Position numbers and translations under genes: made by a program. A stretch of 45,565 bases of DNA, taken from positions 1,364,001 through 1,409,565 of the forward strand of contig NW_027140453.1 in NCBI RefSeq assembly GCF_036365525.1, given 5' to 3'. Within the stretch, counting starts at the first letter, position 1; each line of letters opens with the position of its first letter. Below the pieces are notes generated by a model. The model was not told the origin of the DNA and did not search any database. It saw only the letters and a program-made list of their open reading frames with translations. This document shows positions 3,171 to 40,524 of this stretch, piece by piece. Origin of the DNA: Heterodontus francisci. Its lineage: Eukaryota.

Positions 3171-3231
3171 ACTGTTAATCCACTTCCGTTTCCAAAGTAC
3201 ACGTGGTTATAATTTCCCGTATTCACGCCAC
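3171..3231 (-). pseudogene. TRBJ: Degenerate TCR J segment (GVNTGNYNHVYFGNGSGLTV*), probable pseudo-J
   Basis: Minus strand reads ...TAT AAC CAC GTG TAC TTT GGA AAC GGA AGT GGA TTA ACA GT then GTAAGA (FGxG-x-x-LTV motif). Heptamer-like CACATTG at 3232-3238 (+), but the nonamer at 12 bp is poor (GCCTTCAAA). The donor is in phase 2 rather than 1. Confidence 0.6.
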
Positions 3232-3600
3232 CACATTGCTCACGTAAAAGGCCTTCAAACCATTACTCTGTCAGTTATGAGCCGCCTCTGAGACAGAACC
3301 CTCTCTGACCCTCATTGCCCGAGTCCCAGTCCAGAGCTGCAAGCCGATCATCCAGGGCAACACTACCACCAGGACTGAGAGAAAAGGAGACTTAGAACAG
3401 GACTGTGTAGGAAAGCGAGGGAGTGGTAGTTGATTGAACACAAACGAAGGATGGCAAGGAGAGAGGGGGCAAGCAGAGACAAACAACAGGGAAAGGGAAG
3501 AGGGCAAGGAGAGAGAGAGATAAGGATGAGAAATAATGAGGATGAGGAACTTAGTGGCAGAAACTGTGAACGAAAGAGAAATAAAGTGAGTTCACACAAG

Positions 3601-6175: not shown

Positions 6176-6179
6176 GACA

Positions 6180-6530: not shown

Positions 6531-6534
6531 TATT

Positions 6535-7620: not shown

Positions 7621-7777
7621 TCTGCACCAAAGAGACACAATGATCAAATGGCCTCTTCCAACACAATAATAAGATTCCATCTGGTCAGACACGGTAAACT
7701 CAGAGATGTTATTGTGCGTACCGGCTCCTTTTGCCCCCCAACTCAACCTCCAGCACCTGGACTCGAGCATTACTTAC

Positions 7778-7826
7778 CCAGTACGGTGAGTCGGGTCCTA
7801 CCTCCGAAGGTAGCTGGATCGTTCAC
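7778..7826 (-). CDS. TRBJ: TCR beta-type J segment (VNDPATFGGRTRLTVLG)
   Basis: 49-nt segment GTG AAC GAT CCA GCT ACC TTC GGA GGT AGG ACC CGA CTC ACC GTA CTG G followed by a perfect phase-1 donor GTAAGT (7777-7772); preceded by a 12-RSS. Confidence 0.88.
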
Positions 7827-7854
7827 CACAGAGAGTGAACCCACCATTGAAACC
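7827..7854 (+). other. 12-RSS of J: CACAGAG-12 bp-ATTGAAACC
   Basis: Heptamer 7827-7833, spacer 7834-7845 (12 nt), nonamer 7846-7854, abutting the J coding end. Confidence 0.8.
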
Positions 7855-8056
7855 TCCCTCCCCCAGCAAGCCTCTCGCCTTGCCTGGGCAGTTTGCTATC
7901 TCTTCAGGGGGCATGTGCCCCATGAGATGGTCAACTCAGGATTCAGTCTGCTCCTGCCTGTCCTGACAGTGGAGGTACCTTGCTGCAGGGGTAGGGATTT
8001 CCTGGGCACTGGGGCAGGCAGTCGGGTAGCCTGTGAGAAGGGCAAGAGAATGGTGG

Positions 8057-8137
8057 AGTTCTTGCACGGGGTGAGCACAGGAATGTAACACGGTGCTATA
8101 CTGACCTCCCACGATGTTACTAAGCAGTTCAATAAAA
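8057..8137 (-). other. TRBD: Candidate D segment (coding 8096-8109, GGAGGTCAGTATAG) with 5' 12-RSS and 3' 23-RSS
   Basis: 3' RSS on minus: CACCGTG (8095-8089), 23 nt, GCAAGAACT (8065-8057), nearly identical to the GCAAGAACC nonamer of the V at 31850. 5' RSS on plus: CACGATG (8110-8116), 12 nt, TCAATAAAA (8129-8137, weak). Lies ~270 bp upstream of J with TRB-type 12/23 geometry. Confidence 0.65.
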
Positions 8138-8329
8138 CCTCTCCCCCCCCCCCCCTCTCTCTCTCATTTTTCTGTCCCTTTATCTCTCACTTCAAATTTC
8201 CCTTTTAATCACGTGTCCTTCCCTTTTCAGAGTTATTATCCCATTGGAAGTCTCCTGTTTCCATAAACACTTTCTCTCCTCCATATTCTAATCTTCTTCT
8301 CCCTGTATAAGTCTCTCGACAAGTCTTTC

Positions 8330-16090: not shown

Positions 16091-16435
16091 GTTGTGTGTT
16101 TGATCATCTGAGTGAAAGAAGACACCGTGTTAGTGGATAAAACCCCAATCGTTTTTCTGATATTCTCTCCTGATAGTGAAAACCTCTCAGTGTGGTGCCA
16201 CCCTTCTTAATCTTTCATAGAAAGATAGAAAGCTTATCAGCACAGAAAGAGGCCAGACTCTTCGCCTCTGCACCTGTGCTCTCAATTTTATTCTCACCCG
16301 TCTATTCTTATTGTCAAAAATATGATAGCCCTGCATCAATTCAAGTGGAAATACCGCGCTATTGTATGTCCAACAGGTGTTTCCTGCTGCCTTTGGGGTT
16401 TTTGTTGAACTGCTCCATCTCTCTGAGTCACTGTG

Positions 16436-16889
16436 AAGACTCCAGGCACAGAAATACACGGCCGAGTGATTCTCCCGCAGGCTGGAGGACTCCAGGTTGA
16501 ACTGGGTGCCAGTCGGTCTCTCGGCAGTGAAACCGTCCACCTCCTTCTCTGGATTTTTGTGATTAGTACCCGTGGAGTAAAACATAACCTGAGGCTCCTT
16601 CCTCGGGTATTGTCTGTACCAGAACATGTTAAGGGTACTGCTCCCCTCCAAAGTGCACTTCAGTTCCACTTCCTCCCCCACAACTCTGGAGACAGAGGCA
16701 GGAGTCTGGAGGATAGTCTGCGAGTTCACACCTGGGAGAGAGTGGGGAAGAGGAAGAGGTCAGTAAACAGGGGATTTCTAGGAAATGAAAGGAAGAGGGA
16801 ATGAGTATAGGAAGGTTATTAGAGAAAACGTTGGTATTTCAGACTCACTCACAGTGCAAAAGGATTATCAGAGCCAATGACTGATACAT
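16436..16889 (-). CDS. TRBV: TCR beta V gene segment (TRBV30-like), intact: leader 16853-16889, V exon 16436-16731
   Basis: MYQSLALIILLH-C-VNSQTILQTP..LKC..WYRQ..YFCAWS; GTGAGT donor and CAG acceptor; perfect 23-RSS CACAGTG (16435-16429)-23-ACAAAAACC (16405-16397). Confidence 0.93.
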
Positions 16890-16964
16890 CTTCCCCTTGA
16901 AGCTGTTTAGAAATAAGCAAAGCAGCGAGAACCGGAGTGTAAGCCTTGTGAGGGTCCAAACCTG

Positions 16965-17060
16965 CTCTTTACAAATCATTGAGGAAAATATGAAGAGCAT
17001 GAGGAAGTGATGCAGTGTTGGACACGCCCCCTTCCAACACCCAACCAATCAGAATGGACG
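16965..17060 (-). promoter_or_regulatory. V promoter module conserved upstream of most V genes
   Basis: On +: TTTACAAATCATTG (minus TGTAAA; TATAAA in the copy near 41865), AGGAAGTGATGCA (ETS core), CACGCCC, CCAATCA. Related modules at ~26740, 34810, 36460, 38090, 40360, 41865, 43745. Confidence 0.65.
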
Positions 17061-17539
17061 TGGTTCCTTGTTATGGTTGAGTGACTGGATTAAGTGTTGT
17101 TAATATCCCCAACAAGGATGTATGTTGTTCAGTTTCTAATTTACTGATGAGAAATCTCCAATTGAACATATCCAGATCCCCAACGAACCTCATCGGCATT
17201 CCCACATTAGCCACGTGTAGATTTCCAATTTATAGACATCTGGATTCCAGTTTATCCACACCTTCATCTCCGAATAGCCAGATGTCGATGCCGTGTGTCT
17301 CCTGGCAAACGTTGTAAGCAACAGTGGCCTGAGGCAAATAGGTGCAATGCCACCTGTGTGGCACTGGGCTCCTTACCTATTCTACAGCAGGGCTATGCAC
17401 ATTACTGGGTCCTTGGCAAGTTTAAATTGCACTGGGTGTGCCTGTGCCTGAACCCATGTAACCTGGGCATCAGCCTAGGCCTCTGGCTTATTATCGCAGT
17501 GACATTGCAACTATGCCATCGTTATCCTTAGACCAGGGC

Positions 17540-19490
17540 GGTTGAAGAGACATTTACCAGAATGGTGCCATGGTTGAGAGACGGTTGTTATGTGGAGAGA
17601 CTGGAGAAGCTGGGACAGTTTTCCTGGATCAGAGCAAGCTAATGGGACGCTTTAACCCTGGAGGTACAGCCGTTCGATAGAGCAGTTAGGGAGAAATGAT
17701 ATCCCCTGGCAGGAGCTTCGGAAGGTAGAGACTTCACATATAGCATCAGCAAGCAATTGGGAAAGTTAATGTTATGTTAGCCTTTATCGCAAGGGGATTT
17801 GAGTACAGGAGTAATGAAGTCTTGCTTCAATCGTGGAGAACCTTGGTTAGACCACACCTCGAGTACTGTGTGCAGTTTTAGTCCCTTGACCTTCGGAAGG
17901 ATATTATTCCCATGGAACGAGTGCTAAGAAGTTTCACCCGACTTGTTCCAGGGATGGCGGGACTGTCCTATGAAGAGAGATTGGGGAAACTGGGCCTGAA
18001 TGCTCTGGAGTTTCAAAGAATGAAAGGTGATCTCATTGAAACCTACAAAGTCCTTAAAGGGATAGACAGGGTAGATGCAGGCAAGAAGTTTCCTCTGGTT
18101 GAAAGAGAAGGTAAGTCAGACACTAGAGTGTGTAAAATGGGTAAAGTGAAAGTGTTCGATCGGCTGTCTGAACATAAAGTAGATAAAGCACCAGCAGCAG
18201 ATGAGATGTATTCAAGGATACTGAGGGAAGTGAGGGTGGAAATCGCGTTGGCCATAATTTTTCAGTCTTCCTTAGACTCAGGGCTGGTGCCAGATAACTG
18301 GAGAATTTCAAACGTTACACCCTTGTTCAAAAAGGGGGTAAAGATAAGCCCAGCAACTACAGGCCAGTCAGTTTAACTTTGGTGGTGGGGAAACTTCTAG
18401 AAAAAATAATTCGGGACAAAATCAATAGTCACATGGACGAGTTAATTAATGAAAGACAGCATGGATTCCATAAGGGAAAATCATGTTTAACTAACCTGCT
18501 AGAATTTTTTTGAGAAGGCAACAGAGAGGGTTGATGAGGGCAATGCTGTGGATGTGGTATACATGGACTTTCAAAAGGCGTTTGATACAATGCCACACAG
18601 CAAACATGTGAGAAAACTTGTAACTCGTGGAATAAAAGGGACGGTAGCAACATGGCGACGAAATTGGTTTAGTGACAGAAAACAAAGAGCAATGGTTAAT
18701 GGATGGTTTTTCGGGCTGGAGGAAGGTTTGCAGTGGAGTTCCCCAGGGATCAGTATTAGGACCTTTGCTTTTCCTGATATATATTAATGACCTAGACCTC
18801 GGTGTACAGGGCACAATTTCAAAGTTTGCCGATGATACGAAACTTAGAAGCATTGTGAATGATGAGGAGGATAATGTCGAATTTGAAAAGGACATAGACA
18901 TGTTGGTGGAATGGGCAGACAGGTGGCAGATGAGGTTCAATGCAGAGAAATGTGAAGTGATTCATTTTGGTCGGATGAACAATAGAGAATAAAGGGCACA
19001 ACTCGAAAGGGGGTGCAGGAGCACAGGGGCCTAGGTGTATATTTGTTTCAGTCATTAAGAGTGGAAGGACGGGTTGGGACAGTTTTACTTGGAGAAGAGA
19101 AGGCTGAGAGGTGATTTGATGGAGGTTTTCAAAATCATGAGGGATCTGGACAGAGTAGATGGAGAGAAACTTTTCCCACTCGTGAAAGGATCGAGAGGGC
19201 ACAGATTTAAAGTATTTGGTAAGGGAAGCAAAAGTGACATGAGGGAGAACTTTTTCACACAGCGAGTGGTGAAGGTCCAGAATGCACTGCCTGAGAACGT
19301 GGTGGAGGCAGGTTCAATTGAAGCATTCAAGAGCGAATTAGACAGTTATATTGAAAGGAAGGATGTGCAGGGTTATGGGGAGAAGGCAGGGGAGTGGGAC
19401 TGAGGGAATTTCTCTTCCAGAGAGACAGTGCGGGCACGATGGGCCGAATGACCTCCTTCTGCACTGTAACAATTCTGTGATTCTGTGGTT
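17540..19490 (+). mobile_element. Composite of frameshifted CR1 ORF2 fragments
   Basis: NWRISNVTPLFKKG, YMDFQKAFD, GVPQGSVLGP, FADD and FTQRVV motifs broken by stops and frameshifts; CR1 tail ending (ATTCTGTG)n near 19490. Confidence 0.9.
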
Positions 19491-21509
19491 GAGAAGTCTA
19501 GAACCAGGGGGCTCAATTTCACGACCACAGCGAGTAAGTTAAGGCCAATAGTGGAGATGCATTTAAGGGGGAGATTAGATCAGGACATGAGGGAGTAAGG
19601 AATAGAAGGAGGTGCTGATGGGCTGAGATGCAGAGAGATGGGAACAGGATTTTAAACCGTGGTGCGGAGTCAACTCCCCCTTGGCCCCTTTATTCCCTTC
19701 ACCCACTTGATTCTGGCTGTCACGTGGGACTAAGTCCTCTTAATTCAGACTCAGGCTGGGTGTTTGGGATATTGGGGTTACAGGAGAGCCACCCTCCACC
19801 TAATCCACCAGTTACGGTTAATGGCTTAGTACAAAGAGGAGGAAACTCAGTCCTTTCTTTAACTATCAAGTTACTTTATTCACGTTGTTGTACAATGGAA
19901 GAATAAGGCTTATACACTTGGTTAGACAAAAGCATGCAACTCAACTGGGTTATACAGTTAATAACAAAGCTAGCTAGAATTGATAAGCACACCCACCAGG
20001 TTCCTCTGACCTTTCCCTGACCTCGTCACAGAAAACAAACGATAATTCCCGGAAAGGGAAGAGCTGATGCTGGCCAGACGTTCTGATCTCTCTCTCTTTT
20101 ACGTCATCACCGCGTTGCTCACGCAGGGTCTTCCACTTCCACAATGGTTGGTCTCTGAAGTTTCTCGCTGGTTCTATGCCTGAGATTCTCCATACTTATT
20201 CTCTTTCTTATCTCTTCAAAACTGTGCTGTCTCTTTCCTGTTGGTTTAGGCCTGCTCACCTCGTTCGTATCTTCTCCTTATTGGCCCAGGCCCAAAGACC
20301 CCGGTATCACACCGTTTCCAAATAAGGCTCTATTCCTGTGATTTCTCCCTTGTCTGTCACATAAATTAATTAGTTCAAACTGGTTTTTACCAGCACAGGC
20401 CAGTGTCTGAGCTCAGGTTACTTTAGTTCATGTGCTATCCAGCAGTTTGTAACAGATTCTGTACTTCTTGCAGCCCATGGCCAAGGGATGATGTTGTTTA
20501 TTTTGGGTAACTGTTTCGAACAGCCAGACCAGGCTCGATTGATCGAATGACCTTGGTCAGTGCTGTATGATTCTATAACTATCTAAGACGCATCAAGGGG
20601 CTTATTTGTTTTAGGCTGAGAAAGATTTATTTTCCCTGTCTCCTAAACGAGAATTGAAGGGTTAAATTCTTGCCTGGGCCTAACTCCCAGATGCTTTGAA
20701 AGTTCTTCAAAAGACACCGAGTGTCTGAAAGACAAGTTGGTTAATAATTGTCAACAGTTGCTCAAAACCGCCAAATTAGGAATCTGTTCCAGTGAGAGAC
20801 CTATCTGGGGAGTTGTCTCGTATTTGCATTGTATGAATCATCAGGGGCATGTAGAATAGGGAGCTCTGTGCAACTCCTTGTCAGAATCTTCCGTCCATTC
20901 TTTCAACTGTATCATGAACCCATTTACCCTGCCTTGTAATCTGTTCTTAAAATGTAGAGGCTACCTCACGAAAAGAGCCTTATCACGTGGATGGAGCATT
21001 TTAATCATTAATATTGTATTGATATAATCTGAATCGAAGGAGAACAAGAAGATACAACAATATCAACAAAATAGCAAACCATGATATATCACTGATGGAA
21101 CTGCGAGATGTAAACAATGACGTTAGATATATGATAAACAACAGAGGGATGGATATACACTTAGACAGACAAGAGCCAGATAAATCGATCGATGACAAAT
21201 ATATATAGATGACAGAGTAAATAGATAAATAGATAAATAGAGATAAATAGAGATATGTATCGATAGCTGGAGGGATCGATAGAGCAATGGATGGATAGAC
21301 AAATGGAACAATAGAANNNNNNNNNNNNNNNNNNNNNNNNNNNNNNNNNNNNNNNNNNNNNNNNNNNNNNNNNNNNNNNNNNNNNNNNNNNNNNNNNNNN
21401 NNNNNNNNNNNNNNNNNNNNNNNNNNNNNNNNNNNNNNNNNNNNNNATTGAGAGATAGATAGATTGAGAGATAGATAGATAGATAGATCGATCGATATAG
21501 ACCCCAATC

Positions 21510-22870
21510 ATTGACCCACCTCACTGACCCCACTCACTGACCCCACTCACTGACCCCACTCACTGACACCACTCACTGACTCCACTCACTGACCCCACTC
21601 AGTGACCCCACACACTGACCCCACTCACTGACACCACTCACTGACTCCACTCACTGTCCTCTCTCACTGACTCCACTTACTGTCCCCACTCACGGACCCC
21701 ACTCAGTGACCCCACTCAGTGACCCCACTCAGTGACCCCACTCACTGACTCATCTCACTGACCCCACCCACTGACACCACTCACTGACTCCTCTCTTTGA
21801 CCCCAGTCACTGACACCACTGACTGACCCCACTCACTGTCTCCACTCACTGTCCCCACTCACTGACCCCACTGACTGACCCCGCTCACTGACTCCACTCA
21901 CCGACACCACTCACTGACTCCTCTCACTGACCCCACTCACTGAGTCCACTCACTGTCCACACTCACTGACCCCACTTACTGACCTCACTCACTGACTCCA
22001 CTGAGTGACTCCACTCACTGACTCCAGTCACTGACCACACGCACTGACCCCACTCACTAACCCCTGTCACTGACCCCACTCACTGACTACGCTCACTAAC
22101 CCCGCTCACTAACCCCGCTCACTGACTCCACTCACTGTCCCCGCCCACTGACTCCACTCACTGACCTCACTCACTGACTCCACTGAGTGACACCACTCAG
22201 TGACTCCACTCACTGACTCCACTCACTGACCCCACGCACTGACCCCGCTCACTAACCCCGCTCACTGACCCCACTTACTGATCCCACTCACTGACTCCCC
22301 ATTGACCCCGCTCACTAACCCCACTCACTAACCCCGCTCACTGACTCCACTGACTGTCCCCGCTCACTGTCCCCGCACACTGACCCCACTCACTGACCCC
22401 ACTCTTAGCATCCACTTACTGCCTCTGCTCACTGACTCCACTCATGGACTCCACTAACATCCTCCACTCACTGTCCCTGCTCATTAACCCCACTCACTGA
22501 CCTCACTCACTGACTTCAGTGAGTGACACAACTCAGTGACTCCACTCACTGACTCCACTTACTGATCCCACTCACTGACTCCCCACTGACCCTGCTCACT
22601 AACCCCACTCACTGACCCCACTTACTGATCCCACTCACTGACTCCCCACTAACCCCGCTCACTAACCCCGCTCACTAACCCCACTCACTGACTCCACTCA
22701 CAGACTCCACTCACTGCCTCCGCTCACTGACCCCGGTCACTGACCGCACTCACTGACCCCACTCACTGACCCCACTCACTGACCTCACTCACTGACTCAA
22801 CTGAGTGACACCACTCATTGACCCCACTCATAGATTCCACTCACTGACTCCACTCACTGACCCCACTCAA
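21510..22870. repeat. Minisatellite, 13-bp unit CACTGACCCCACT
   Basis: Directly visible degenerate tandem array, preceded by (GATA)n and an N-gap. Confidence 0.95.
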
Positions 22871-23310
22871 TCTCCCAGATCAATCCCTATAATAATCCTT
22901 CATTCTCGAGATCAATCCCTATAATAATCCTTAATTCTCCAGATCAATCCCGATAATAATCCCTCATTCTCCAGATCAATCCCTATAATAATCCTTCATT
23001 CTCCAGATCAATCCCGATAATAATCCCTCATTCTCCAGAGCAATCCCTATAATAATCCTTAATTCTCCAGATCAATCCCAATAATAATCCCTCATTCTCC
23101 AGATCAATCCATATAATAATCCTTCATTCTCCAGATCAATCCCAATAATAATCCCTCATTCTCCAGATCAATCCCTATAATAATCCTTCATTCTCCAGAT
23201 CAATCCCTATAATAATCCCTCATTCTCCAGATCAATCCCTATAATAATCCTTCATTCTCCAGATCAATCCCTAGAATAATCCTTCATTCTCCAGATCAAT
23301 CCCTGTAATA
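22871..23310. repeat. Minisatellite, 32-bp unit CTCCAGATCAATCCCTATAATAATCCTTCATT (~13 copies)
   Basis: Period 32 (e.g. CCAGATCA at 22971 and 23003); highly homogeneous. Confidence 0.95.
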
Positions 23311-23866
23311 TCCCCTTATTGTCTCTATCTCTGTCTCCCTCTCTGTCTCAGTCTCTTTAACTCTGTCTGTCGTTTTTGCTTTCTCTCACTAGATCTCTCT
23401 CTGTCACACACATACACTATCTTCCCTTCTCTAACAAAGTGGGTGTCCTTGTCCTGTTCATGTATATCAAGCTGGATCTGCAGACCTCCCGCTCTTTCCG
23501 TTTTCTCACTAAATCCTTTTCAAAGCCATTGTCCATTCCATGGTCCTGGAACCCCCTCTGCTGTCCCTGTGCAGAAGGTAAACACAGGGTCAGTGCATAA
23601 AAAATCCAGATTATTGTCATTGATTCCGGATAGTTACATTCTGAGATCTCGTGACATCCTTATTCATCGTTCATTGCACCCTCGCCAGTACCTGTAAATC
23701 TAAAATCTCACTACAATATTAACTCAGCTCTTTTTATTGTAATAAACACTTTCACTCTGCAAAAGGGAACAGCAGGTCGAGGCACCGAACGGTTTTACCC
23801 TCCACAGGTGTTTCCTGCTGCCTTTCGGGTTTTTGTTGAATTGCTCCATCTCTCTGAGTCACTGTG

Positions 23867-24162
23867 ATGACTCCAGGCACAGGAATATACGGCCGAATGA
23901 TTCTCCCGTCGGCTGGAGGACTCCAGGTCGAACGTGGAGTCAGTCGGTCTTTCGGTGGTGAAAGCCTCCACCGTCCCCTTTGAGTTCACCCCTTGTGCAG
24001 TTAGGGAGTAAAACATCAGCTGCAGCTCCTTCCCCGGGTATTGTCTGTACCAGTATATGTAAGGGTCACTGCTACCATCCACGGTGCATTTCAGCTTCAC
24101 CTGCTCACCAGGAAATTTGGAGACAGCGGCGGGAGTCTGGTTTATAGTCTGTGAGTTCACAT
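23867..24162 (-). pseudogene. TRBV: Leaderless TRBV30-like V exon (open frame, intact RSS)
   Basis: DVNSQTINQTP..C..WYRQ..YSCAWS; 23-RSS 23828-23866 is perfect; comparison with 36320-36420 shows the whole leader exon deleted near 24300. Confidence 0.85.
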
Positions 24163-25931
24163 CTGGGAAAGAGACAGGGAGAGGACGAGATCAATAAACA
24201 GGGAACTTCAGTCCAGTGGGGAGAGAGAAAGAAATAGATAAATAAATAAAAACATAACCAAAAGAAATGTGAAGTAGAAATATTGTTTCAATGAAATCTC
24301 AATGAATCAGCAAAGGGGAGAGAGCAGGAGTGATGAGTGCTGTCAATAACCAACCCACTCTTTACAAATCATTGGAAGGAACAGGATCTGTATCTGTGTG
24401 TGTGTATGCGCGTGTGTGCATCTTCCTCTCTCTTTCTTACTATTTGTTGCTCACTCTCTCTCTGCATGTATCGAGCTTTGTCTCCCATTCTTTCTCTCTC
24501 TTTTTCTCTCTGTATCTGTGTGTGCGCACGCGTGTGTGTGCATCTTCCTCTCTCTGTCTCCCTCTGACCCCTTCATTTATGCTGAGTGTTTCCTCTCTAT
24601 GTCTCCCTGATTCACCCTCTCTGTCTCGATGTTTAATCGCCAGATGTATTGAGTTCCTGTACATTTGGGAGTTGTTCGCCTCTTTGCAGTGAAGGTTAGA
24701 GGGAGGTTAACCAGACTGGTGCCAGGGATGAGGGACTTCAGTTACTGTGGAGAGACTGGAGAAGCTGGGGGTTTCTCTCCTTAGAGCAGAGAAGGTTAAT
24801 GGTAGATGTGATCCAGATATTGAAGATCATAGAGGATTTTGATAGATAATTGATGATGAAGGACATCTTCTACTGGTTAATATATAGAAAATCTATGAAA
24901 AGACATTCATTTGTTACATTACTGCAGTATATTTAATTAGTTCACACGAACTGTAATCGCCTAAAGATAGAGTTAGATGGATACAGAGACAGAGAGATAT
25001 TTAAACAGGTAGAGAGATAGATAGATAGAGAGACAAAGAGATCGACAACCAGGTAGAGCGATAGATAGAGAGAGAGACAGTCAGGTAGACAGATTGATAT
25101 AGAGAGAGGTAGAGAAATAGAGAGATGGAGGGAAAGTCAGATAGGTAGAGAAATATCGAGCTAGATAGAGAGACAGTCAGGTAGACAGATAGATATAGAG
25201 AGAGGGAGAGAAATCGAGAGATAGATAGAGAGACAGTCACTGCCCCTGTAAAAGACAGGAATGTATATCGGCATTCTCTCATTTTACACCAGCTTGGTAG
25301 ATAGAGTGAGAGAGAGGGATGGAAATAAAGGGAGAGAGAGGGATGGAGAGAGATGGATGGAGAGAGGGATGGAGAGGGAGAGAGTGGAATGCAGAGAGGG
25401 AGCGATGGGAATGTATTGATCAGTCGTGATCTCATTGAAGGGCGGAGTGTTTCCGAGGTGATGAATGTTCTCGTTGTGTTCCCAGGTCACTGTCAAAGTG
25501 TGTTCCAGACTCTGATGTTTATCATGGTCCTACAGTGCACTCTGCTGTCCCTTTGGAGAAATAAAACACAGTGACATAACACNNNNNNNNNNNNNNNNNN
25601 NNNNNNNNNNNNNNNNNNNNNNNNNNNNNNNNNNNNNNNNNNNNNNNNNNNNNNNNNNNNNNNNNNNNNNNNNNNNNNNNNNNNNNNNNNNNNNNNNNNN
25701 NNNNNNNNNNNNNNNNNNNNNNNNNNNNNNNNNNNNNNNNCTTTATCTGATCTTCATTTCACATATTAAAATATTTATTAACCTCTCAAAGACCGCTGAA
25801 CGTTGACCCTTCAGTCTTCACCTTTGTGGAGCAAAGATCCCCCGATGCTCAAATTATCTTGATAACTTTAACCTCTGTGTTCTGATATCATTCCTGTAAA
25901 GTCTATTTCACAATTCCCCTGTGTTTCTATA

Positions 25932-26043
25932 TCTTCGTCTTCTTTGGCCTCCTTATCTCGAGAGACAATGAGTAAGCGCCTGGAGGTGGTCAGTGGTGTG
26001 TGGAGCAGCGCCTGGAGTGGCTATAAAGGCAAATTCTAGAGTG
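25932..26043. mobile_element. Short insertion, probable retroelement end, in a V 3' flank
   Basis: Present here but absent from the paralogous flanks at ~34100 and ~39650. Confidence 0.5.
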
Positions 26044-26207
26044 ACTTTCTATTAAATTTCGCCCTGTCTTCTTGTGAAAAACATGTTCCCAATAATAAAA
26101 AAACAACACCCAACAAGACGCAGCACCACCTGGTTTTATCTGAAACAGGTGTTTCCTGCTGCCTTTGGGGTTTTTGTTGAACTGCTCCATCTCTCTGAGT
26201 CACTGTG

Positions 26208-26659
26208 AAGACTCCAGGCACAGAAATACACGGCCGAGTGATTTTCCTACAGGCTGGAGGACTCCAGGTTGAACTGGGAGTCAGTCGGTCTCTCGGCAGT
26301 AAAACCGTCCACCGTCCCCTCTGGATCCACATAGTTAGCAGTATTGGAGTAAAACATCAGCAGCGGCTCCTTCCCCGGCTCTTGTCTGTACCAGTACATG
26401 TAGAGGGTACTGCTGCTCCCCTCCACAGTGCACCTCAGTTCCATTCCTTTCCCGGGAAATCTGGAGACAGCGGCGGGAGTCTGGTGGATATTCTTTGAGT
26501 TCACATCTGGGAGAGAGATGGAGAGAGGAGGAGATCAGTAAACAGGGAACTTCTGGGAATGAAAGAAAAACAGGGAGAGGAGAGAAAGGTTCTGAAGGAT
26601 AATCCTTGTATTTGGCACTCACGTTGAACCAGGATTATCAGAGCCAGGAACAGATACAT
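26208..26659 (-). pseudogene. TRBV: TRBV30-like pseudogene (in-frame TAG in FR3)
   Basis: Leader 26623-26659 (MYLFLALIILVQ, GTGAGT); V exon 26208-26506 with TAG at 26247-26249; perfect 23-RSS 26169-26207. Confidence 0.9.
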
Positions 26660-27049
26660 CGCCCACTTGACACTGCCCTCTCAAACAGCAAAGGCAGTGG
26701 AACAGAGGGGATCAGTTCTGTGACTAACCAATCCGCTCTTTACAAATCATTGAGGAAAACATGAAGGGCATGAGGAAGTGATGCAGTGTTGGACACGCCC
26801 CTTTCCACCACCCAACCAATCAGAATGGACGTGGTTGCTTTTGATGGTTGAGTGACTGGATTAAGTGTTGTTAATATCCCCAACAAGGGTGTCTGTTGTT
26901 CAGTTTCTAATTTACTGATTAGAACTCTCCAGTTGTTCATATCCAGATTTCCAAATGAACCTCATCGGCATTCCCAAATTACCCACATGTAGATTTCCAA
27001 TTACAGACATCTGGATTCCAAATGATCTGCTCCTGTCGGGGATGTATTA

Positions 27050-27425
27050 GTGTGTTGGTAATTTAACGAGACTCCTAATCCACAGTCTCTGCTAGTGTTT
27101 TAGCGATGTGGGGTGAATCCCACCAATGCAGATCATGAAATTTCAATGCCATTAATAAATCTGGATTTTTTTTTGGAAAGAAAGCTCGTCTAATCGTGTC
27201 CATTGTTTCAAAAATCCATCCAGTTCTCTGACGACTATGAGGGAAGGAAATCTGCCGCCTTCACCTGGTCTGGCCTACATGTGACTCCAGATCCACACAA
27301 TGTGTTTGACTATTAAATGCCCTCTGCAATGGCCCAGCAAGCCTCTCAGTTCAAGGGCAATTAGAGATGGGCAATAAATGCTGGCCTAACCAGCGAGGCC
27401 CACATCACATGAACGAATTAAGAAA
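27050..27425 (+). mobile_element. Ancient SINE-like remnant
   Basis: Core GGAAGGAAATCTGCC also occurs inverted at ~33045-33060; tail ...CCCACATCACATGAACGAATTA. Family not assigned. Confidence 0.45.
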
Positions 27426-27569
27426 ACAACAGCTAGATGTTGATTCTCAAATAGTCAGGTGGGACTCCTGGCAAACGTTTTCTGCAACACTGGCCCGAGG
27501 GATGTAGGTGGAACAATATCTGGGTCATACTGGGCTGCTGATCTATTCTACAGCTTGGTCTGTGCTCAT

Positions 27570-30500
27570 TTTGGATATACCGTTTTGGATACTGTTGGGG
27601 GGGGGACGACTTACCAGGGGTAAGCAATGGGGTACAGGTCTCTGGTGCAGAGTCTGTCCCTGTTGCTCAGAAGGGAAGGGGGAAGAGGAGCAGAGCATTA
27701 GACATTAGGGACTCCATAGTTAGGGGAACAGAGAGGAGGTTCTGTGGGAACGAGAGAGACTCACGGTTGGTGTGTTGCCTCCCAGGTGCCAGGGTTTGTG
27801 ATGTCTCGGATAGTGTTTTTGGGATCCTTAAGGGGTAGGGGGAGCAGCCCCAAGTCGTGGTCCACATAGGCACCAACGACATAGGTAGGAAGAGAGATGT
27901 GGATTTAAGGCAGAAATTCAGGGAGCTAGGGTGGAAGCTTCGAGCGAGAACAAACAGAGTTGTTATCTCTGGGTTCTTGCCCGTGCCACGTGCTAGCGAA
28001 GCGAGGAATAGGGAGAGAGAGGAGTTGAACACGTGGCTGCAGGGATGGTGTAGGAGGGAGGGTTTTGGTTTCCTGGATAATTGGGGCTCTTTCTGGGGTA
28101 GGTGGGACCTCTACAAACAGGATGGTCTTCACCTGAACCAGAGGGGTACCAATATCCTGGGGGGGAGATTTGCTAGTGATCTTCGGGGGGGTTTAAACTT
28201 ATTCAGCAGGGGGATGGGAACCTAAATTGTAGTTCAAGTGTGCAGGCTGTTGAAAGTAGTGAGGTAGGGGATAAGGTTACAGGGACGCAAGAGGGCACTG
28301 GCAAGCAAGAACTTGGTTTAAAGTGTGTCTACTTCAACGCCAGCAGCATCCGGAATAAGGTGGGTGAGCTTGCAGCATGGGTTGGTACCTGGGATCTCGA
28401 TGTTGTGGCCATTTCGGAGACATGGGTAGAGCAGGGACAGGAATGGATGCTGCAGGTTCCGGGATTTAGATCTTTCAGTAAGAACAGAGAAGATGGTAAA
28501 AGAGGGGAGTGGGGGTGGGGTGTGGCATTGTTAATCAAGGAGAGTATTACGGCGGCAGAAAGGACGTTTGAGGACTCGTCCACTGAGGTAGTATGGGCCG
28601 AGGTTAGATACAGGAGAGGAGAGGTCACCGTGTTGGGAGTTTTCTATGGACCTGTGGGGCGGCACAGTGGCACAGTGGTTAGCACTGCAGCCTCACAGCT
28701 CCAGGGACCCGGGTTTGATTCTGGGTACTGCCTATGTGCAGTTTGCAAGTTCTCCCTGTGTCTGCGTGGGTTTTCTCCGGGTGCTGCGGTTTCCTCCCAC
28801 AAGCCAAAAGACTTGCAGGTTGGTAGGTAAATTGGCCATTATAAATTGTCACTAGTATAGGTAGGTGGTAGGGAAATATAGGGACAGGTGGGGATGTTTG
28901 GTAGGAATATGGGATTAGTGTAGGATTGGTATAAATGGGTGGTTGATGGTCGGCACAGACTAGGTGGGCCGAAGGGCCTGTTTCAGTGCTGTATGTCTAA
29001 TCTAATCTAATCTAGACCTCCGAATAGTTCCAGAGATGTAGAGGAGAGGATAGCAAAGATGATTCTCGACAGCAGCGAGAGTAACAGGATAGTTGTTATG
29101 GGGGACTTAAACTTTCCAAATATTGACTGGAAATACCATAGTTTGAGTACTTTAGATGGGTCAGTTTTTGTCCAGTGTGTGCAGGAGGGTTTTCTGACAC
29201 AGTATGTAGACAGGCCAACCAGGGGCGATGCCGCATTGGATTTGGTACTGGGTAATGAACCCGGCCAGGTGTTAGATTTAGATGTAGGTGAGCACTTTGG
29301 TGATAGTGATCACAATTCGGTTAGGTTTACCTTAGCAATGGGCAGGGACAGGCATATACAGCAGGGCAAGAATTATAGCTGGGGGAAAGGAAATTATGAT
29401 GCGATTAGGCAAGATTTAGGATGCGTAGGATGGGGAAGGAAACTGCAGGGGATGGGCACAATCGAAATGTGGAGCTTATTCAAGGAGCAGCTACTGCGTG
29501 TCCTTGATAAGTATGTACCTGTCAGGCAGGGAGGAAGTTGTCGAGCGAGGGAGCCGTGGTTTACTAAAGAAGTTGAAGCGCTTGTCAAGAGGAAGAAGAA
29601 GGCTTATGTTAGGATGAGACGTGAAGGCTCAGTTTGGGCGCTTGAGAGTTACAAGCTAGCCAGGAAGGATCGAAAGGGAGAGCTTGGAAGAGCGAGGAGA
29701 GGACACGAGAAGTCATTGGCGGATAGGATCAAGGAAAACCCTAAGGCTTTCTATAGGTATATCAGGAATAAAAGAATGACTAGAGTTAGATTAGGGCCAA
29801 TCAAGAATAGTAGTGGGAAGTTGTGTGTGGAATCAGAGGAGATAGGGGTTGCGTTAAATGAATATTTAGCATCAGTATTTACAGTAGAGAAAGAAAATGT
29901 TGTCGAGGAGAATACTGAGATACAGACTACTAGGCTAGATGGGATTGAGGTTCACAAGGAGGAGGTGTTAGCAATTTTGGAAAGTGTGAAAATAGATAAG
30001 TCCCCTGGGCCAGATGAGATTTATCCTAGGATTCTCTGGGAAGCCAGGGAGGAGATTGCAGAGCCTTTGTCCTTGATCTTTATGTCGTCATTGTTGACAG
30101 GAAAAGTGTCGGAAGACTGGAGGATAGCAAATGTTGTCCCCTTGTTCAGGAAGGGGAGTAGAGACAGCCCTGGTAATTATAGACCTGTGAGCCTTACTTC
30201 GGTTGTGGGTAAAATGTTGGAAAAGGTTATAAGAGATAGGATTTATAATCATCTTGAAAAGAATAAGTTCATCAGCGATAGTCAGCACGGTTTTGTGAAG
30301 GGTAGGTCGTGCCTCACAAACCTTATTGAGTTTTTTGAGATGGTGACCAAACAGGTGGATGAGGGTAAAGCAGTGGATGTGGTGTATATGGATTTCAGTA
30401 AGGCGTTTGGTAAGGTTCCCCACGGTAGGCTATTGCAGAAAATACGGAAGTATGGGATTGAAGGTGATTTAGTGATTTGGATCAGAAATTGGCTCGCTGA

Positions 30501-31540
30501 AAGAAGACAGAGGGTGGTGGTTGATGGTAAATGTTCATCCTGGAGTTTAGTTACTAGTGGTGTACCGCAAGGATCTGTTTGGGGGCCACTGCTGTTTGTC
30601 ATTTTTATAAATGACCTGGATGAGGGTGTAGAAGGGTGTGTTAGTAAATTTGTGGATGACACGAAGGTCGGTGGAGTTGTGGATATTGCCGAAGGATGTT
30701 GTTGGTTACAGATGGACATAGATAGGCTGCAGAGCTGGGCTGAGAGATGGAAAATGGAGTTAAATGCGGAAAAGTGTGAGGTGATTCACTTTGGAAGGAG
30801 TAACAGGAATGCAGAGTACTGGGCTAATGGGAAGATTCTTGGTAGTGTCGATGAGCAGAGAGATCTTGGTGTCCAGGTACATAAATCCCTGAAAGTTGCC
30901 ACCCAGGTTAATAGGGCTGTTAAGAAGGCATACGGTGTGTTAGTTTTTATTAGTAGGGGGATCGAGTTTCGGAGCCACGAGGTCATGCTGCAGCTGTACA
31001 AAACTCTGGTGCGGCCGCACCTGGAGTATTGCGTGCAGTTCTGGTCACCGTATTATAGGAAGGATGTGGAAGCTTTGGAAAGGGTACAGAGGAGATTTAC
31101 TAGGTTGTTGCCTGGTGTGGAGGGAAGGTCTTATGAGGAAAGGCTGAGGGACTTGAGGTTGTTTTCGTTGGAGAGAAGGAGGAGGAGAGGTGACTTAATA
31201 GAGACATATAAGATAATCAGAGGATTAGATAGGTTGGATAGTGAGAGTCTTTTTCCTCAGATGGTGATGGCAAACACGAGGGAACATAGCTTTAAGTTGA
31301 GGGGTGATAGATATAGGACAGATGTCAGAGGTAGTTTCTTTACTCAGAGAGTAGTAGGGGCGTGGAACGCCCTGCCTGCAACAGTAGTAGACTCGCCAAC
31401 TTTAAGGGCATTTAAGTGGTCATTGGATAGACATATGGATGAAAATGGTATAGTTTAGGTCAGATGGTTTCACAGGTCGCCGCAACATCGAGGGCCGAAG
31501 CGCCTGGACTGCGCTGTAATGTTCTAAGTTCTGTGTTCTA
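27570..31540 (+). mobile_element. Near full-length CR1 LINE: ORF1 SGNH-esterase region + ORF2 (endonuclease-RT), split by a SINE
   Basis: ORF1 motifs GDSIVRG, HIGTNDIG, DGLHLN (with an internal stop); ORF2 starts CVYFNA.SIRNK..ISETW and resumes after the SINE (ORF 29059..31458); RT motif altered to FVDD. Confidence 0.95.
28654..29014 (+). mobile_element. tRNA-derived SINE (HE1-like) nested in CR1 ORF2
   Basis: Pol III A-box TGGCACAGTGG and B-box-like GGTTTGATTC; CR1-type 3' end GGGCCGAAGGGCCTGTT + (CTAAT)n; GACCT duplicated at 28649-28653 and 29015-29019. Confidence 0.85.
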
Positions 31541-31571
31541 TTACTGGGTCCATAACCATCAGGGAGGCTCA

Positions 31572-31790
31572 AATCCACTGCTGCCAACTGCTGGTGGAAA
31601 ATGAGCACTGAGATTCAATCTACTGCTGCCCCCTGCCGGTGGAAGATGAGCACAGCGATTCAATCTACTGTTGCCCCCTGTCGGGGGAAAATGAGGACAG
31701 ACATTCAATCTACTGCTGCCCCTGCTGGTGGAAGATGAACACTGACATTCAATCTACTGCTGCCCCCTGCCGGTGGATGATGAGCACTGA
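31572..31790 (-). promoter_or_regulatory. Tandem array of 5 x 45-bp units with CTCF-like motifs, directly 3' of a V RSS
   Basis: Minus cores CCGGCAGGGGGCAG (x2), CCGACAGGGGGCAA, CCAGCAGTTGGCAG, CCAGCAGGGGCAG; same unit length and core as 12780-13070. Confidence 0.72.
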
Positions 31791-31849
31791 ACTCCCGTTC
31801 ATCCGCTGCAGGTTCTTGCAGCTGCGAATCCGCTTTCTCAAACACTGTG

Positions 31850-32616
31850 CGATACTGCAAGCACAGAAATAGACAGCGGTGTGAGATGGAGCAGCGTTTC
31901 TCAGTGCCAAAGTAAACAGTGCATTGCTGGATCTGACTGCATTAAATGACTCAGACGTGTAATTTGTAACAGACCCTTCTGTCGCAGAATAGAACAGAGA
32001 TTCCAGTGCCCTGTCTGGTTGTTGTCTGTACCAGTACATTAATGTACAGCCAGTATTGGTCAGCGTGCATCTGAGTGTTGTTGAATCTCCTGCTGCAATC
32101 GATAGGATAGAGGGCGACTGTTCCACATAGGAGGCGAGTATTCCTGTGGGATGGAACATCGATTAAATTATTATTTCAGTCAATAATGGATTGGAGCAGG
32201 AGCTGCATTGCAAGAAAGAAAGGGCTGACATTAATATAGCGCCGTTCAGGACCTCAAGACATCAGAAAGGCTTTGCAACCAATGTAGTTACTCCCTCAGT
32301 ACTGCCTCTGCGACAGTGCAGCACTCCCTCAGTACTGCCTCTGCGATAGTGCAGCACTCCCTCAGTACTGCCTCTGCGACAGTGCAGCACTCCCTCAATA
32401 CTGCCTCTGCGATAGTGCAGCACTCCCTCAGCCCTGACACCTGGGGTGTTACTTTTGACTTTGAGCTCAAGTGTTGCGGAGTGAGACTCAGACACAGGAG
32501 TGTTCCAGACAGAATCACCGCTGACATTACAATACATTATTCTACACAGTTTCTGACTTTCACTTACGTGGAAAGAATGCAGCCATCAAGATTAAACAGA
32601 GAACTTCATGCAACAT
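31850..32616 (-). CDS. TRBV: Divergent TCR beta-type V gene segment, intact: leader 32568-32616, V exon 31850-32143
   Basis: MLHEVLCLILMAAFFP-R-ILASYVEQSP..LRCTLTNTGCTLMYWYRQ..HTAVYFCACSI; GTAAGT donor and CAG acceptor; 23-RSS CACAGTG (31849-31843)-23-GCAAGAACC (31819-31811). Confidence 0.9.
32288..32430. repeat. 33-bp tandem repeat (CACTCCCTCAGTACTGCCTCTGCGACAGTGCAG) x~4 in the V intron
   Basis: Directly visible. Confidence 0.9.
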
Positions 32617-32899
32617 GATTTCTTCATTCGATACTAACTCGATGTGTGAACGTGTGGAGTTTTCAACAACACACTTGCAGGCGTTTTCTATATCGTATCC
32701 AATTAAATACCCAGCATCCAGTTGTCATTGTTATTGGCAGTCACTTACTGCGACACTCTGCTCCACCCCATTACATTGCATAACAATGTTGTGGAATGAT
32801 ACAACACAGGAGGATAGGGGGAGATTGAATAGAGGTGTTCACATTTCAGAAAGGGCTTTGATAGAGTAGAATTCAGGGAAACAAGCCTCTATACCCAGA

Positions 32900-33270
32900 G
32901 AGTGTGCCCATCCCTTATTGACCCTGAGAAGGTGATGGTGAACCATCTTTGGGAGTACCTGCTGGGCCATATCAGAGGGCAGTTAATAGTCAACCTCATT
33001 GCTGTGGGTCTGCAGTCACTTATAGGCCAGACCGGGTAAGAACGGCAGATTTCCTTCCTTGAAGGACATCAATGAATCCGTTGGGTTTTTACGACACTCC
33101 ATGTACAGGATTACTCATACTTTCCATGACAGATTTCTATTTATTTATTTAATTGAATTTAAATTCCATTTCTGCCCCTGGTGAAAATTGAACTCATGTC
33201 CGGGGATCATTAGTACAGGCCTCTGGATTACTAGTCCAGTAAAATAACCACTCTGCTACCGTACCTCTTT
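32900..33270 (-). mobile_element. Ancient SINE-like remnant, inverted relative to 27050-27425
   Basis: GGCAGATTTCCTTCC is the reverse complement of the core at ~27245. Confidence 0.4.
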
Positions 33271-33859
33271 GCTGAATGGGAGTTAAAGGGTTAAATTGTT
33301 CACTGGTCTGAACTGCTGGTTTCTTTGAAGAACACATCAAATGCGACTCGAGTCTGAGATGAAAGTTGGTAAACAGGTTTCAGCAGCTTCTGATCTCGCC
33401 GTCAGGAGGCAGATGTCCCAGTCCCGGAGATGAAGGTATCTGGAGAGGGGTCTCACTTTTGAACAGTGTGAAACAGCGCTCAGATGGTTAAGAGTTCCGA
33501 GCTGAGTTAGTTCCTATACATTGTGGGGTTGTTTGCCTACGTGTAGTGAGGGCTAGAGAGAGGGAGAGGTTTGGAGGGAGAGGGATGGAGAGAGGGAGAG
33601 AGAGGAAGAGAGAGGGATGGAGAGAGAGGGATGGAGAGAGGGAGAGAGAGGGATGGAGAGAGGGATCGACAGGACGTTACTGATCAGTCATGATCTCATT
33701 GAAGGGCGGAGTGTTTTCGAGGTGATGAATGAACTCCTTGTGTTCCCAGGTCGCTGTTAAAGTGTGTTCCAGACTCTGATGTTTATCATGGTCCTGCAGC
33801 GCACTCTGCTGTCCCTTTGGAGAAAGAAAACACCGTGACATCCAACGACAACGGATGTA

Positions 33860-33890
<31 letters not shown>

Positions 33891-34271
33891 CTCTAACTAT
33901 CTACCTGTGTTTATCTGATCTTCATTTCACATATTAAAATCTGTAATAATCTCTCTAAGACCGTTGAATGCTTACCCTTCAGTTTCTCCTTTCTGGAGCA
34001 AAGATCCCCCGATGTTCAAACTATCTTGATAACTTTAACCTCTGTGTTCTGATATCATTTCTGCAAAGTCTATTCCACAATTCCCCTGTGCTTCTATATC
34101 TAACCTGTCACTTTCTATTTAAATCCGCACTGTCTTCTTGTGAGAAACATGTTCCCAATGATAAAAAAAACAACCAACAGGAAGCAGCACCGACTGGGTT
34201 TATCTGAAACAGGTGTTTCCTGCTGCCTTTGGGGTTTTTGTTGAACTTCTCCATCTCTCTGAGTCACTGTG

Positions 34272-34727
34272 AAGACTCCAGGCACAGAAATACATGGCTG
34301 AGTGATTCTCCCGCAGGTTGGAGGACTCCAGTTTGAACTCGTACTTACTCAGTTTCTTGGCGGTAAAACCGTCCACCGTCCCCTCTGGATCCACATAGTT
34401 AGCAGTATTGGAGTAAAACATCAACAGCGGCTCCTTCCCTGGCTCTTGTCTGTACCAGTACATGTAGATGATACTGCTGCTCCCCTCCACTGTGCACCTC
34501 AGTTCCACTCCTTTCCCGGGAAATCTGGAGACAGCAGCGGGAGTCTGGAGGATAGTCTGTGAGTTCACATCTGGGAGAGAGATGGAGAGAGGAGGAGATC
34601 AGTAAACAGGGAAGTTCTGGGGATGAAAGGGAGACAGGGAGAAGAGGGGACAGTTATTACCGATAGTTTTTGCATTTCACACTCACTTACAATGAAACAA
34701 GATTATCAGACACAGTAACTGATAGAT
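34272..34727 (-). pseudogene. TRBV: TRBV30-like V with start codon lost (ATG>ATC); V exon open, RSS perfect
   Basis: Leader 34691-34727 begins ATC TAT CAG (paralogue at 40278 has ATG), with an in-frame TGA just upstream; V exon 34272-34570; 23-RSS 34233-34271. Confidence 0.85.
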
Positions 34728-34918
34728 CTTTCACTTCAACTTGTTCTCTTAATAGACACAGGAGTGAGATCAGGAGCTTAGACTCTTGTGAGGCTCCAAA
34801 TCAACTCTTTACAAATCATTGGGAGGAACATGAAGAGCATTAGGAAGTGATACAATGTTGGAGACGCCCATTCACCCAGGTCAACAAATCAGAATTGAAT
34901 TGGCTGCCAATCTGCTTC

Positions 34919-34951
<33 letters not shown>

Positions 34952-35897: not shown

Positions 35898-36382
35898 ATC
35901 TCTCCAGGCACAGAAATACACGGCCGAGTGATTCTCCCGCAGGCTGGAGGACTCCAGATTGAACTCGGAGTCTGTCGGTCTCTCGGCGGTGAAACCCTCC
36001 ACCGTCCCCTCTGAGTTCACCCTTTGTGCAGTTAGGGAGTAAAACATCAGCTGCGGCTCCTTCCCCGGGTATTGTCTGTACCAGTACATGTAAGGGTTAC
36101 TGGTGCCATCCACGGTGCATTTCAGCTTCACCTGCTCCTCAGACAATTTGGAGACAGAGGCGGGAGTCTGGTGGATAGTCTGTGAGTTCACATCTGGGAA
36201 AGAGACAGGGAGAGGAGGAGATCAGTAAACAGGGAAATTCAGTCCAGTGGGGAGAGAGAAAGAGAGAGAAGGAGAGAACGAAATAAATAAAACCATATCC
36301 TAAAGAAATGTTAAGTAGAATTATTGTTTCAATAAAATTCCTTACGGTGAAACAGGGTGATCAGAGTCAGTAACAGATACAT
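35898..36382 (-). CDS. TRBV: TCR beta V gene segment (TRBV30-like), intact: leader 36346-36382, V exon 35898-36193
   Basis: MYLLLTLITLFH-H-VNSQTIHQTP..CTVDGTSNPYMYWYRQ..YFCAWR; GTAAGG donor; perfect 23-RSS 35859-35897. Confidence 0.94.

Positions 36383-40465: not shown

Positions 40466-40524
<59 letters not shown>

What the first reader, a model, noticed from the sequence alone, without database searches (positions are those of the whole stretch)
7778..8137. Non-canonical D next to a lone J: possible second TCR-beta-like D-J unit
Seen: a 14-nt core GGAGGTCAGTATAG between two heptamers, with exact 23-bp (GCAAGAACT) and 12-bp (weak) spacing, ~270 bp upstream of a J. Two frames are open (GGQY, EVSI); the third ends in TAG. 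Established: D-beta cores are strongly conserved as GGGAC... across jawed vertebrates. Inference: this D is not the canonical D-beta, so the TRBV30-like array may feed a distinct D-J(-C) unit, i.e. a second or divergent beta-like chain or a decayed duplicate cluster.
Basis: partly seen in the sequence, partly recalled or inferred. Interest (0 to 1): 0.85.

Follow-up and report, generated by a model that had tools for sequence, protein, structure and literature searches.

The report
Shark TCR-beta D–J unit, off-consensus
A shark T-cell-receptor beta gene cluster has its own small D segment, whose sequence differs from the D-beta core kept in most other vertebrates, next to a J segment that is transcribed and spliced to a C-beta-like exon; several defects suggest the unit works weakly or is decaying.

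Summary
On the minus strand a 14-nt core, GGAGGTCAGTATAG (8109-8096), lies between CATCGTG and CACCGTG. An exact 23-bp spacer leads to GCAAGAACT. The 5' nonamer is weak. A TRBJ-like J (7826-7778) starts 269 bp downstream. A D-like layout of this quality is expected 0.003 times per window and occurs once.

The Vs upstream are TRBV30-like. In an RNA-type run, J is spliced exactly at its predicted donor to an exon outside the window. That exon starts EADQEVKHP, which looks like C-beta. The D and both signals are identical in the two other sequence versions seen, while the neighbouring spacer DNA differs by 3-6%.

Several features argue against a healthy unit:
- The 5' nonamer fits better at 14 bp than at 12 bp.
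- J reads FGGR, not FGxG.
- One D frame ends in a stop.
- The transcripts seen are unrearranged.
- A second J-like segment (3231-3171) is defective, so J is not quite alone.

I found no rearranged junctions, and the tool for cross-species loci was closed. My verdict is a real TRB-type D-J unit of a TRBV30-type cassette whose productive use is unproven. First-stage notes report similar non-canonical D units on other DNA of this genome; these are unverified.

The parts
8129..8139 (-). 5' D-RSS nonamer region. At 12-bp spacing it is TTTTATTGA (8137-8129, 5/9). At 14-bp spacing it is GGTTTTATT (8139-8131, 7/9).
   Evidence: The 9-mer GCAGTTCAA at the spacer/nonamer border otherwise occurs only in the TRBV30-like V 23-RSSs: 7 hits against 0.35 expected.
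8117..8128 (-). 5' D-RSS spacer, 12 bp if counted to TTTTATTGA
8110..8116 (-). 5' D heptamer CATCGTG. The GTG next to the core is intact; 5/7 to consensus.
8096..8109 (-). D-like core GGAGGTCAGTATAG (frames GGQY, EVSI, RSV*)
   Evidence: It is the only D-like layout in the window, with chance expectation 0.003. DNA contigs of run X1 match it without difference.
8089..8095 (-). 3' D heptamer CACCGTG (6/7)
8066..8088 (-). 3' D-RSS spacer, exactly 23 bp
8057..8065 (-). 3' D nonamer GCAAGAACT (6/9). It is nearly the same as the divergent V's nonamer GCAAGAACC.
7827..7854 (-). J 12-RSS: nonamer GGTTTCAAT, 12-bp spacer, heptamer CTCTGTG
7778..7826 (-). TRBJ-like J coding segment, VNDPATFGGRTRLTVL. 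The motif is FGGR, not FGxG.
   Evidence: RNA-type contigs of X5 cover 7783-7938 with no difference inside J.
7772..7777 (-). Splice donor GTAAGT (phase 1), in use
   Evidence: loose end exactly at 7778 in X5. The exon joined there starts AGGCAGACC..., which reads E-A-D-Q-E-V-K-H-P in frame, and it is absent from the window.
3171..3261 (-). Second J-like segment (..NTGNYNHVYFGNGSGLTV). Its heptamer is CAATGTG. By my reading, its best nonamer (GGTTTGAAG) matches consensus at about 5/9 and lies at 14-bp spacing. The possible donors give phase 0 or 2, not 1. Probably a pseudogene.
16397..43482 (-). Upstream V array. It holds TRBV30-like 'CAWS' V exons, five intact by ORF plus four damaged (premature stop, truncation by a microsatellite, a 17-bp spacer, or no long ORF). 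Most have perfect CACAGTG-23-ACAAAAACC signals. One divergent TRBV lies at 32159-31850.

Best explanation
This is the D-J part of a TCR-beta-type V-D-J-C cassette of a shark, read on the minus strand. An array of TRBV30-like V segments, each with a 23-RSS, is followed by one D-type segment and, 269 bp later, one TRBJ-type J with a 12-RSS.

Inferred mechanism. RAG would pair the 3' D 23-RSS with the J 12-RSS and delete the 269 bp between them. A V 23-RSS would then join the 5' D signal. J is spliced from its phase-1 donor to a C-beta-like exon more than 7.7 kb away, outside the window.

Shown: the signal architecture, its non-random occurrence, the TRBV30-like nature of the Vs, transcription of the unrearranged D-J interval and J, and use of the J donor.

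Inferred: that the D actually recombines.

The D core is unrelated to GGGACAGGGGGC, its 5' signal is off-consensus, and J carries FGGR. I therefore read it as a real but weak ('ORF'-class) unit that contributes little, if anything, to productive beta chains.
For: - Layout: the D-like layout is unique in the window and expected 0.003 times by chance. It lies on the same strand as, and between, the V array and J.
- V identity: the Vs are V-set domains. Their best natural PDB matches are TRBV30 beta chains of the MEL5 TCR, at E about 1e-22, against about 1e-13 or worse for the other stand-alone natural TCR chains listed. The divergent V also matches TCR beta chains.
- J: it reads ..TRLTVL, has a 12-RSS and a GTAAGT donor.
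- Expression: in run X5 (contigs total 159 Mb, so not a whole-genome set) contigs cover 7783-8079. A loose end exactly at 7778 joins J in frame to EADQEVKHP. Val at position 6 and Pro at position 9 match human TRBC as I recall it. Two sister runs, X16 and X17, show nothing, which fits tissue-specific transcription.
- Constraint: across the window and two variants in DNA run X1, eight sites differ in 7946-8056 and none in 8057-8138, which holds the D and both signals. My Poisson estimate is P about 0.003-0.05.
- Other species: germline Vs of the same CAWS family, with the same RSS read-through, exist in Chiloscyllium punctatum.
Against: - No D-J or V-D-J junction was seen. The X5 contigs run unbroken from J into its germline RSS, so the transcripts detected are sterile.
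- The 5' nonamer is only 5/9 at 12 bp and fits better at 14 bp, a spacing that normally cripples recombination.
- J has FGGR instead of FGxG, and the RNA contigs confirm it.
- One D frame ends in TAG.
- The second J is defective, and an intact 886-aa LINE ORF sits between the two Js.
- The run kinds are guesses made by the tool.
- No cross-species copy of the D could be fetched.
Confidence: 0.6

Rival explanations
1. Dead relic. The unit was once a working D-J pair of a duplicated cassette but no longer recombines. Only sterile transcripts run through it and splice from J to a shared C exon.
For: - The transcripts seen are germline, not rearranged.
- The 5' D nonamer fits best at 14 bp.
- J reads FGGR.
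- The second J has a 14-bp spacer and the wrong splice phase.
- A LINE is inserted between the Js.
- One D frame has a stop.
Against: - The D and both signals are invariant across three sequence versions, while the flank differs by 3-6%.
- CAC/GTG next to the core is intact in both heptamers, and the 23-bp spacer is exact.
- The neighbouring Vs keep perfect signals.
- Contigs drop rare variants, so diverse junctions would not be seen even if present.
Confidence: 0.25
2. Dedicated second beta-like chain. The TRBV30-type V array, this D, J and a divergent C together form a separate receptor chain gene, not just another TRB cassette.
For: - The cassette has its own V family, its own non-canonical D and its own J, spliced to a C exon outside the window.
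- Unverified first-stage notes describe a 'TRBV30-type V array with its own non-canonical D, J and divergent C' and inverted cassettes elsewhere in this genome.
Against: - The nine C residues known fit ordinary C-beta spacing.
- An ordinary TRBV sits inside the same array.
- J is of typical TRBJ type.
- The C exon could not be read, so its divergence is untested.
Confidence: 0.15
3. Not a true D. The element is a patchwork of V-signal pieces, made by gene conversion or germline RAG activity, that only mimics a D.
For: - The 5' signal shares GCAGTTCAA at its spacer/nonamer border with the TRBV30-like V signals, and that 9-mer occurs nowhere else in the window.
- The last 8 nt of the core, the heptamer, the next 2 nt and the nonamer resemble the divergent V's end: CAGTAT(A/C)G CAC(C/A)GTG TT ... 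GCAAGAAC. The unanchored local-alignment test gives P about 0.02.
Against: - No V framework sequence lies upstream.
- The interiors of the spacers are unrelated (7/23).
- The position, 269 bp upstream of a used J, and the exact 23-bp spacing are what a working D needs.
- Origin from V signals would not stop it acting as a D.
Confidence: 0.07

Closest known systems
TRBD-TRBJ-TRBC cassettes of bony vertebrates (for example TRBD1, GGGACAGGGGGC)
   Same: A short D with a 5' 12-type and a 3' 23-bp signal, a few hundred bp upstream of TRBJ with 12-RSS. J is spliced in phase 1 to C-beta. Germline transcription runs through the D-J region.
   Different: The core is unrelated to the conserved G-rich sequence and has a stop in one frame. 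Only one usable J is visible. The 5' nonamer is off-register. J lacks FGxG. The J-C intron is longer than 7.7 kb and carries a LINE.
The additional TRBD genes of the skink Tiliqua rugosa (three TRBD; PMC11754216)
   Same: More than one TRBD within a TRB locus, each flanked by 12/23 signals. The paper reports the conserved GGGACAGGGGGC sequence for TRBD1.
   Different: Those lie in a single D-J-C region of a reptile and all their signals are reported as canonical. Here the D belongs to a cassette headed by one V family, and its 5' signal is weak.
Human TRBV30 / mouse TRBV31 / opossum TRBV28, the lone inverted V behind TRBC (PMC2275272)
   Same: The Vs upstream of this D are of the same V lineage (SQTIHQ..., CAWS end). 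Their best PDB matches are TRBV30 chains.
   Different: In mammals this V is single, inverted and has no D-J of its own. Here it forms an array followed by its own D and J.
TRD D segments
   Same: The same 12-D-23 signal arrangement, with variable, non-conserved cores.
   Different: The V and J here are beta-type (TRBV30-like; ..TRLTVL), not delta-type.

Membership tests
TRBD (TCR-beta D gene segment) | Short core flanked by a 5' 12-bp-spacer RSS and a 3' 23-bp-spacer RSS | tested here: met
   The 3' signal is CACCGTG-23-GCAAGAACT. The 5' signal is CATCGTG with a 5/9 nonamer at 12 bp. The layout is unique in the window, with chance expectation 0.003. Caveat: the nonamer fits better at 14 bp.
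TRBD (TCR-beta D gene segment) | Lies between TRBV segments and TRBJ, in the same orientation | tested here: met
   V array at 43482-16436, D at 8109-8096 and J at 7826-7778, all on the minus strand.
TRBD (TCR-beta D gene segment) | Conserved G-rich core (GGGACAGGGGGC-like) | tested here: not met
   The core is GGAGGTCAGTATAG. The conserved core is cited in PMC11754216. No GGGAC-type core with signals was found in the window.
TRBD (TCR-beta D gene segment) | Its nucleotides appear in CDR3 of rearranged transcripts, and D-J joints exist | not testable with these tools
   Only contigs were available and they drop rare junctions.
TRBJ (functional J-beta) | FGxG motif | tested here: not met
   J reads FGGR (TTC GGA GGT AGG). 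RNA-type contigs show no difference there.
TRBJ (functional J-beta) | 12-RSS upstream and a phase-1 donor that is spliced to C-beta | tested here: met
   The signal is GGTTTCAAT-12-CTCTGTG. The donor is used exactly at 7778 and joins an in-frame EADQEVKHP. Calling that exon C-beta rests on nine residues.
TRBV30 lineage (for the V array that would feed the D) | Closest to TRBV30 among known V-beta genes | tested here: met
   MEL5 (TRBV30) beta chains 3hg1_E, 4jfd_E and 4jfh_E match at E 5e-22 to 8e-21, well ahead of the other stand-alone natural TCR chains listed. MEL5 is stated to be TRBV30 in PMC5887915. No tree was built.

The most novel reading that the evidence does not exclude
Sharks keep a complete second TRB cassette headed by TRBV30-type Vs with its own, non-canonical D, J and C. 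Tetrapods would have lost its D-J-C and kept only the single inverted TRBV30-type V behind TRBC. This unit would then be a surviving piece of the ancestral two-cassette beta locus, or even of a separate beta-like chain.
Probability: 0.18. Interest if true: 0.75.

Novelty: new variant of a known kind. Interest (0 to 1): 0.5.

Why it matters
The D-beta core is often cited as conserved across a wide range of vertebrates, and the lone inverted TRBV30-type V of mammals has no accepted origin.

A shark cassette in which TRBV30-type Vs have their own D and J, with a different D core, would do two things. It would show that the conserved core is not required for a beta-type D. It would also give a testable origin for the inverted V.

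If the unit is only a decaying copy, it still records how antigen-receptor cassettes duplicate and die in cartilaginous fish. I found no open paper describing germline D and J segments of the shark TCR-beta locus.

Tried and rejected
1. Canonical D. A scan for GGGAC-type cores found many hits, none with flanking signals.
2. C exon in the window. The 28 nt joined to J have no match with up to 3 mismatches. Positions 1-7700 hold a 37-bp tandem array, a LINE and TC-rich repeats.
3. Rearranged transcripts. A homologue search with a V ORF returned six germline-type V sequences (five from Chiloscyllium punctatum, one from a JGI contig) and one unrelated rearranged chain. None came from this species.
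Two metagenome scans, one for the D core with heptamer ends and one for a degenerate J, found nothing. This is uninformative.
5. V remnant. There is no V framework similarity upstream of the D, so I rejected this as the main reading.
6. Literature. I found no open paper giving germline D or J of shark TCR-beta. PMC3222143 is not held.
7. Mouse D-beta1 signals. Their resemblance to the signals here is from my memory only. I could not verify it, so I did not use it.
8. Earlier findings. A search by sequence was blank.
9. Limits kept. No search was made with a joined J-C model; the join was only translated in a script. N gaps were not filled.

Full report
**What is there.**
Read on the minus strand, the window is part of a shark TCR-beta-type locus.
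- The best V homologues are germline V genes of the bamboo shark Chiloscyllium punctatum, at 59-71% identity.
- Unverified first-stage notes place NAR-TCR genes in the same genome.
- Nine or ten V exons lie between 43482 and 16436.
- Most belong to one family that ends in YFCAWS and carries a perfect CACAGTG-23-ACAAAAACC signal.
- One, at 32159-31850, is a different TRBV that ends in CACS.
- Five of the CAWS Vs have intact exons. The others have a premature stop, are truncated by a microsatellite, carry a 17-bp spacer or lack a long ORF.
- The CAWS family matches the beta chain of the MEL5 TCR far better than the other stand-alone natural TCR chains in the PDB listing. E is about 1e-22, against about 1e-13 or worse.

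**The observation.**
- D unit: CATCGTG (8116-8110), the core GGAGGTCAGTATAG (8109-8096), CACCGTG (8095-8089), a 23-bp spacer and GCAAGAACT (8065-8057).
- J unit, 269 bp further on: signal GGTTTCAAT-12-CTCTGTG, then a 49-nt coding segment (7826-7778) reading VNDPATFGGRTRLTVL, then GTAAGT.
- Chance: a D-like layout of this quality occurs once in the window on both strands. It is expected 0.003 times in first-order Markov random sequences built from the window.
- Placement: the element also lies on the right strand, just upstream of a J.

**Is it used?**
- The run search found DNA-type runs and three small RNA-type runs of one sample.
- In run X5 the contigs total only 159 Mb, so it is not a whole-genome set.
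- X5 contigs cover 7783-8079, which is J, its germline signal and most of the D-J interval.
- A loose end sits exactly at 7778, the last base before GTAAGT.
- The 28 nt joined there read in frame as E-A-D-Q-E-V-K-H-P.
- Val at position 6 and Pro at position 9 match the start of human C-beta as I recall it.
- This sequence is not in the window, so the C exon lies more than 7.7 kb downstream.
- The sister runs X16 and X17 show nothing here.

J is therefore transcribed and spliced to a C-beta-like exon in one library. However, the contig runs unbroken from J into its unrearranged signal, so what is visible is sterile germline transcription. No D-J or V-D-J joint was reported. Contigs drop rare variants, so diverse junctions could not have shown up anyway.

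**Constraint.**
DNA run X1 carries two versions of the D-J interval. They differ from the window at 4 and 8 of 132 positions (7946-8077). Their contigs merge into a single shared sequence from 8052 onward. There are eight variable sites in 7946-8056 and none in 8057-8138, which holds the D and both signals. By my Poisson estimate this has P of about 0.003-0.05, depending on which flank sets the rate. This is suggestive but not decisive.

**Signs of weakness.**
- The 5' nonamer is 5/9 at 12 bp and 7/9 (GGTTTTATT) at 14 bp. A 14-bp spacer normally recombines poorly.
- J has Arg in place of the second Gly of FGxG, and the RNA contigs agree.
- One D frame ends in TAG.
- A second J-like segment at 3231-3171 (..YFGNGSGLTV) has its nonamer at 14 bp and no phase-1 donor, so it looks dead.
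- An intact 886-aa LINE ORF (RVT_1 plus endonuclease) lies between the two Js.

**An unexpected detail.**
- The 5' D signal shares the 9-mer GCAGTTCAA, at its spacer/nonamer border, with the TRBV30-like V signals. That 9-mer occurs nowhere else in the window: 7 hits against 0.35 expected.
- The last 8 nt of the core, the 3' heptamer, the next 2 nt and the nonamer resemble the end of the divergent V: CAGTAT(A/C)G CAC(C/A)GTG TT ... GCAAGAAC.
- The spacer interiors are unrelated, and no V framework lies upstream.

I read this as patchy exchange or shared descent among signals in the cassette, not as evidence that the element is a broken V.

**Comparison with what is known.**
[quoted passage not shown] A skink has three TRBD genes, and the paper reports the conserved sequence for TRBD1 (PMC11754216).
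- A non-canonical TRBD may therefore not be without precedent, and it does not by itself imply another chain.
- The inverted TRBV30-type V behind TRBC is described as an ancient arrangement in mammals (PMC2275272).
- An array of TRBV30-type Vs with its own D and J has not been described in any open paper I could find.
- First-stage notes list further non-canonical Ds and inverted V-D-J-C cassettes on this chromosome and on other pieces. I could not check them.

**Verdict.**
- This is a genuine TRB-type D-J unit belonging to a TRBV30-type cassette. It is transcribed and spliced to a C-beta-like exon.
- Recombination is unproven, and several features point to weak function or decay.
- Confidence that it is a true D-J gene-segment unit is about 0.6.
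- The chance that it marks a separate beta-like chain, or the ancestral second cassette, is about 0.15-0.2.

**Limits.**
- Both metagenome scans were blank.
- The run kinds are the tool's guesses.
- N gaps were left unfilled.
- No search used a joined J-C sequence.

Noticed in passing
window 3171-3261 (minus): A second J-like segment (NTGNYNHVYFGNGSGLTV) with heptamer CAATGTG. Its nonamer lies at 14-bp spacing and its donors give phase 0 or 2 only. It is probably a pseudo-J, so the 'lone J' has a dead neighbour.
   Followed up: partly
window 1-3139: A 37-bp tandem array of about 85 copies (AGGGGCTGGAGGAGGTTACAGAGATAGGGAGGGTTGT) abuts the second J-like segment.
   Followed up: no
window 3430-6090 (+): An intact 886-aa LINE ORF (endonuclease plus RVT_1) is inserted between the two J segments, opposite in orientation to the cassette. 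A second, 799-aa copy lies at 29059-31458.
   Followed up: partly
window 8124-8132 and the V signals (e.g. 16405-16413, 43161-43169): GCAGTTCAA at the spacer/nonamer border is shared by the 5' D signal and the TRBV30-like V 23-RSSs, and it occurs nowhere else in the window.
   Followed up: partly
window 8057-8103 versus 31811-31857 (minus): The 3' end of the D core, its heptamer and its nonamer resemble the coding end and signal of the divergent V (nonamers GCAAGAACT and GCAAGAACC). The spacers are unrelated.
   Followed up: partly
V signals, e.g. window 16425-16435, 43181-43191 (minus): The TRBV30-like V signals read CACAGTGACTCAG. This contains a perfect TGACTCA (AP-1-type) site overlapping the heptamer, and it is conserved in all copies.
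   Followed up: no
window 39775-39815 (minus): One CAWS V has a signal with a 6-nt deletion, leaving a 17-bp spacer. Its exon is also truncated at the 5' end, so it is a pseudogene.
   Followed up: no
window 7993 and 8049: All DNA contig depth in run X1 shows G where the window has A. Two versions of 7946-8077 exist, at depths 12 and 23. So the window differs from both copies in that sample, through another individual, paralogues or assembly error.
   Followed up: no
window 8156-8343: An X5 contig lies here at only about 90% identity (18 of 188 letters differ). This suggests that a paralogous D-upstream region elsewhere in the genome is transcribed.
   Followed up: no
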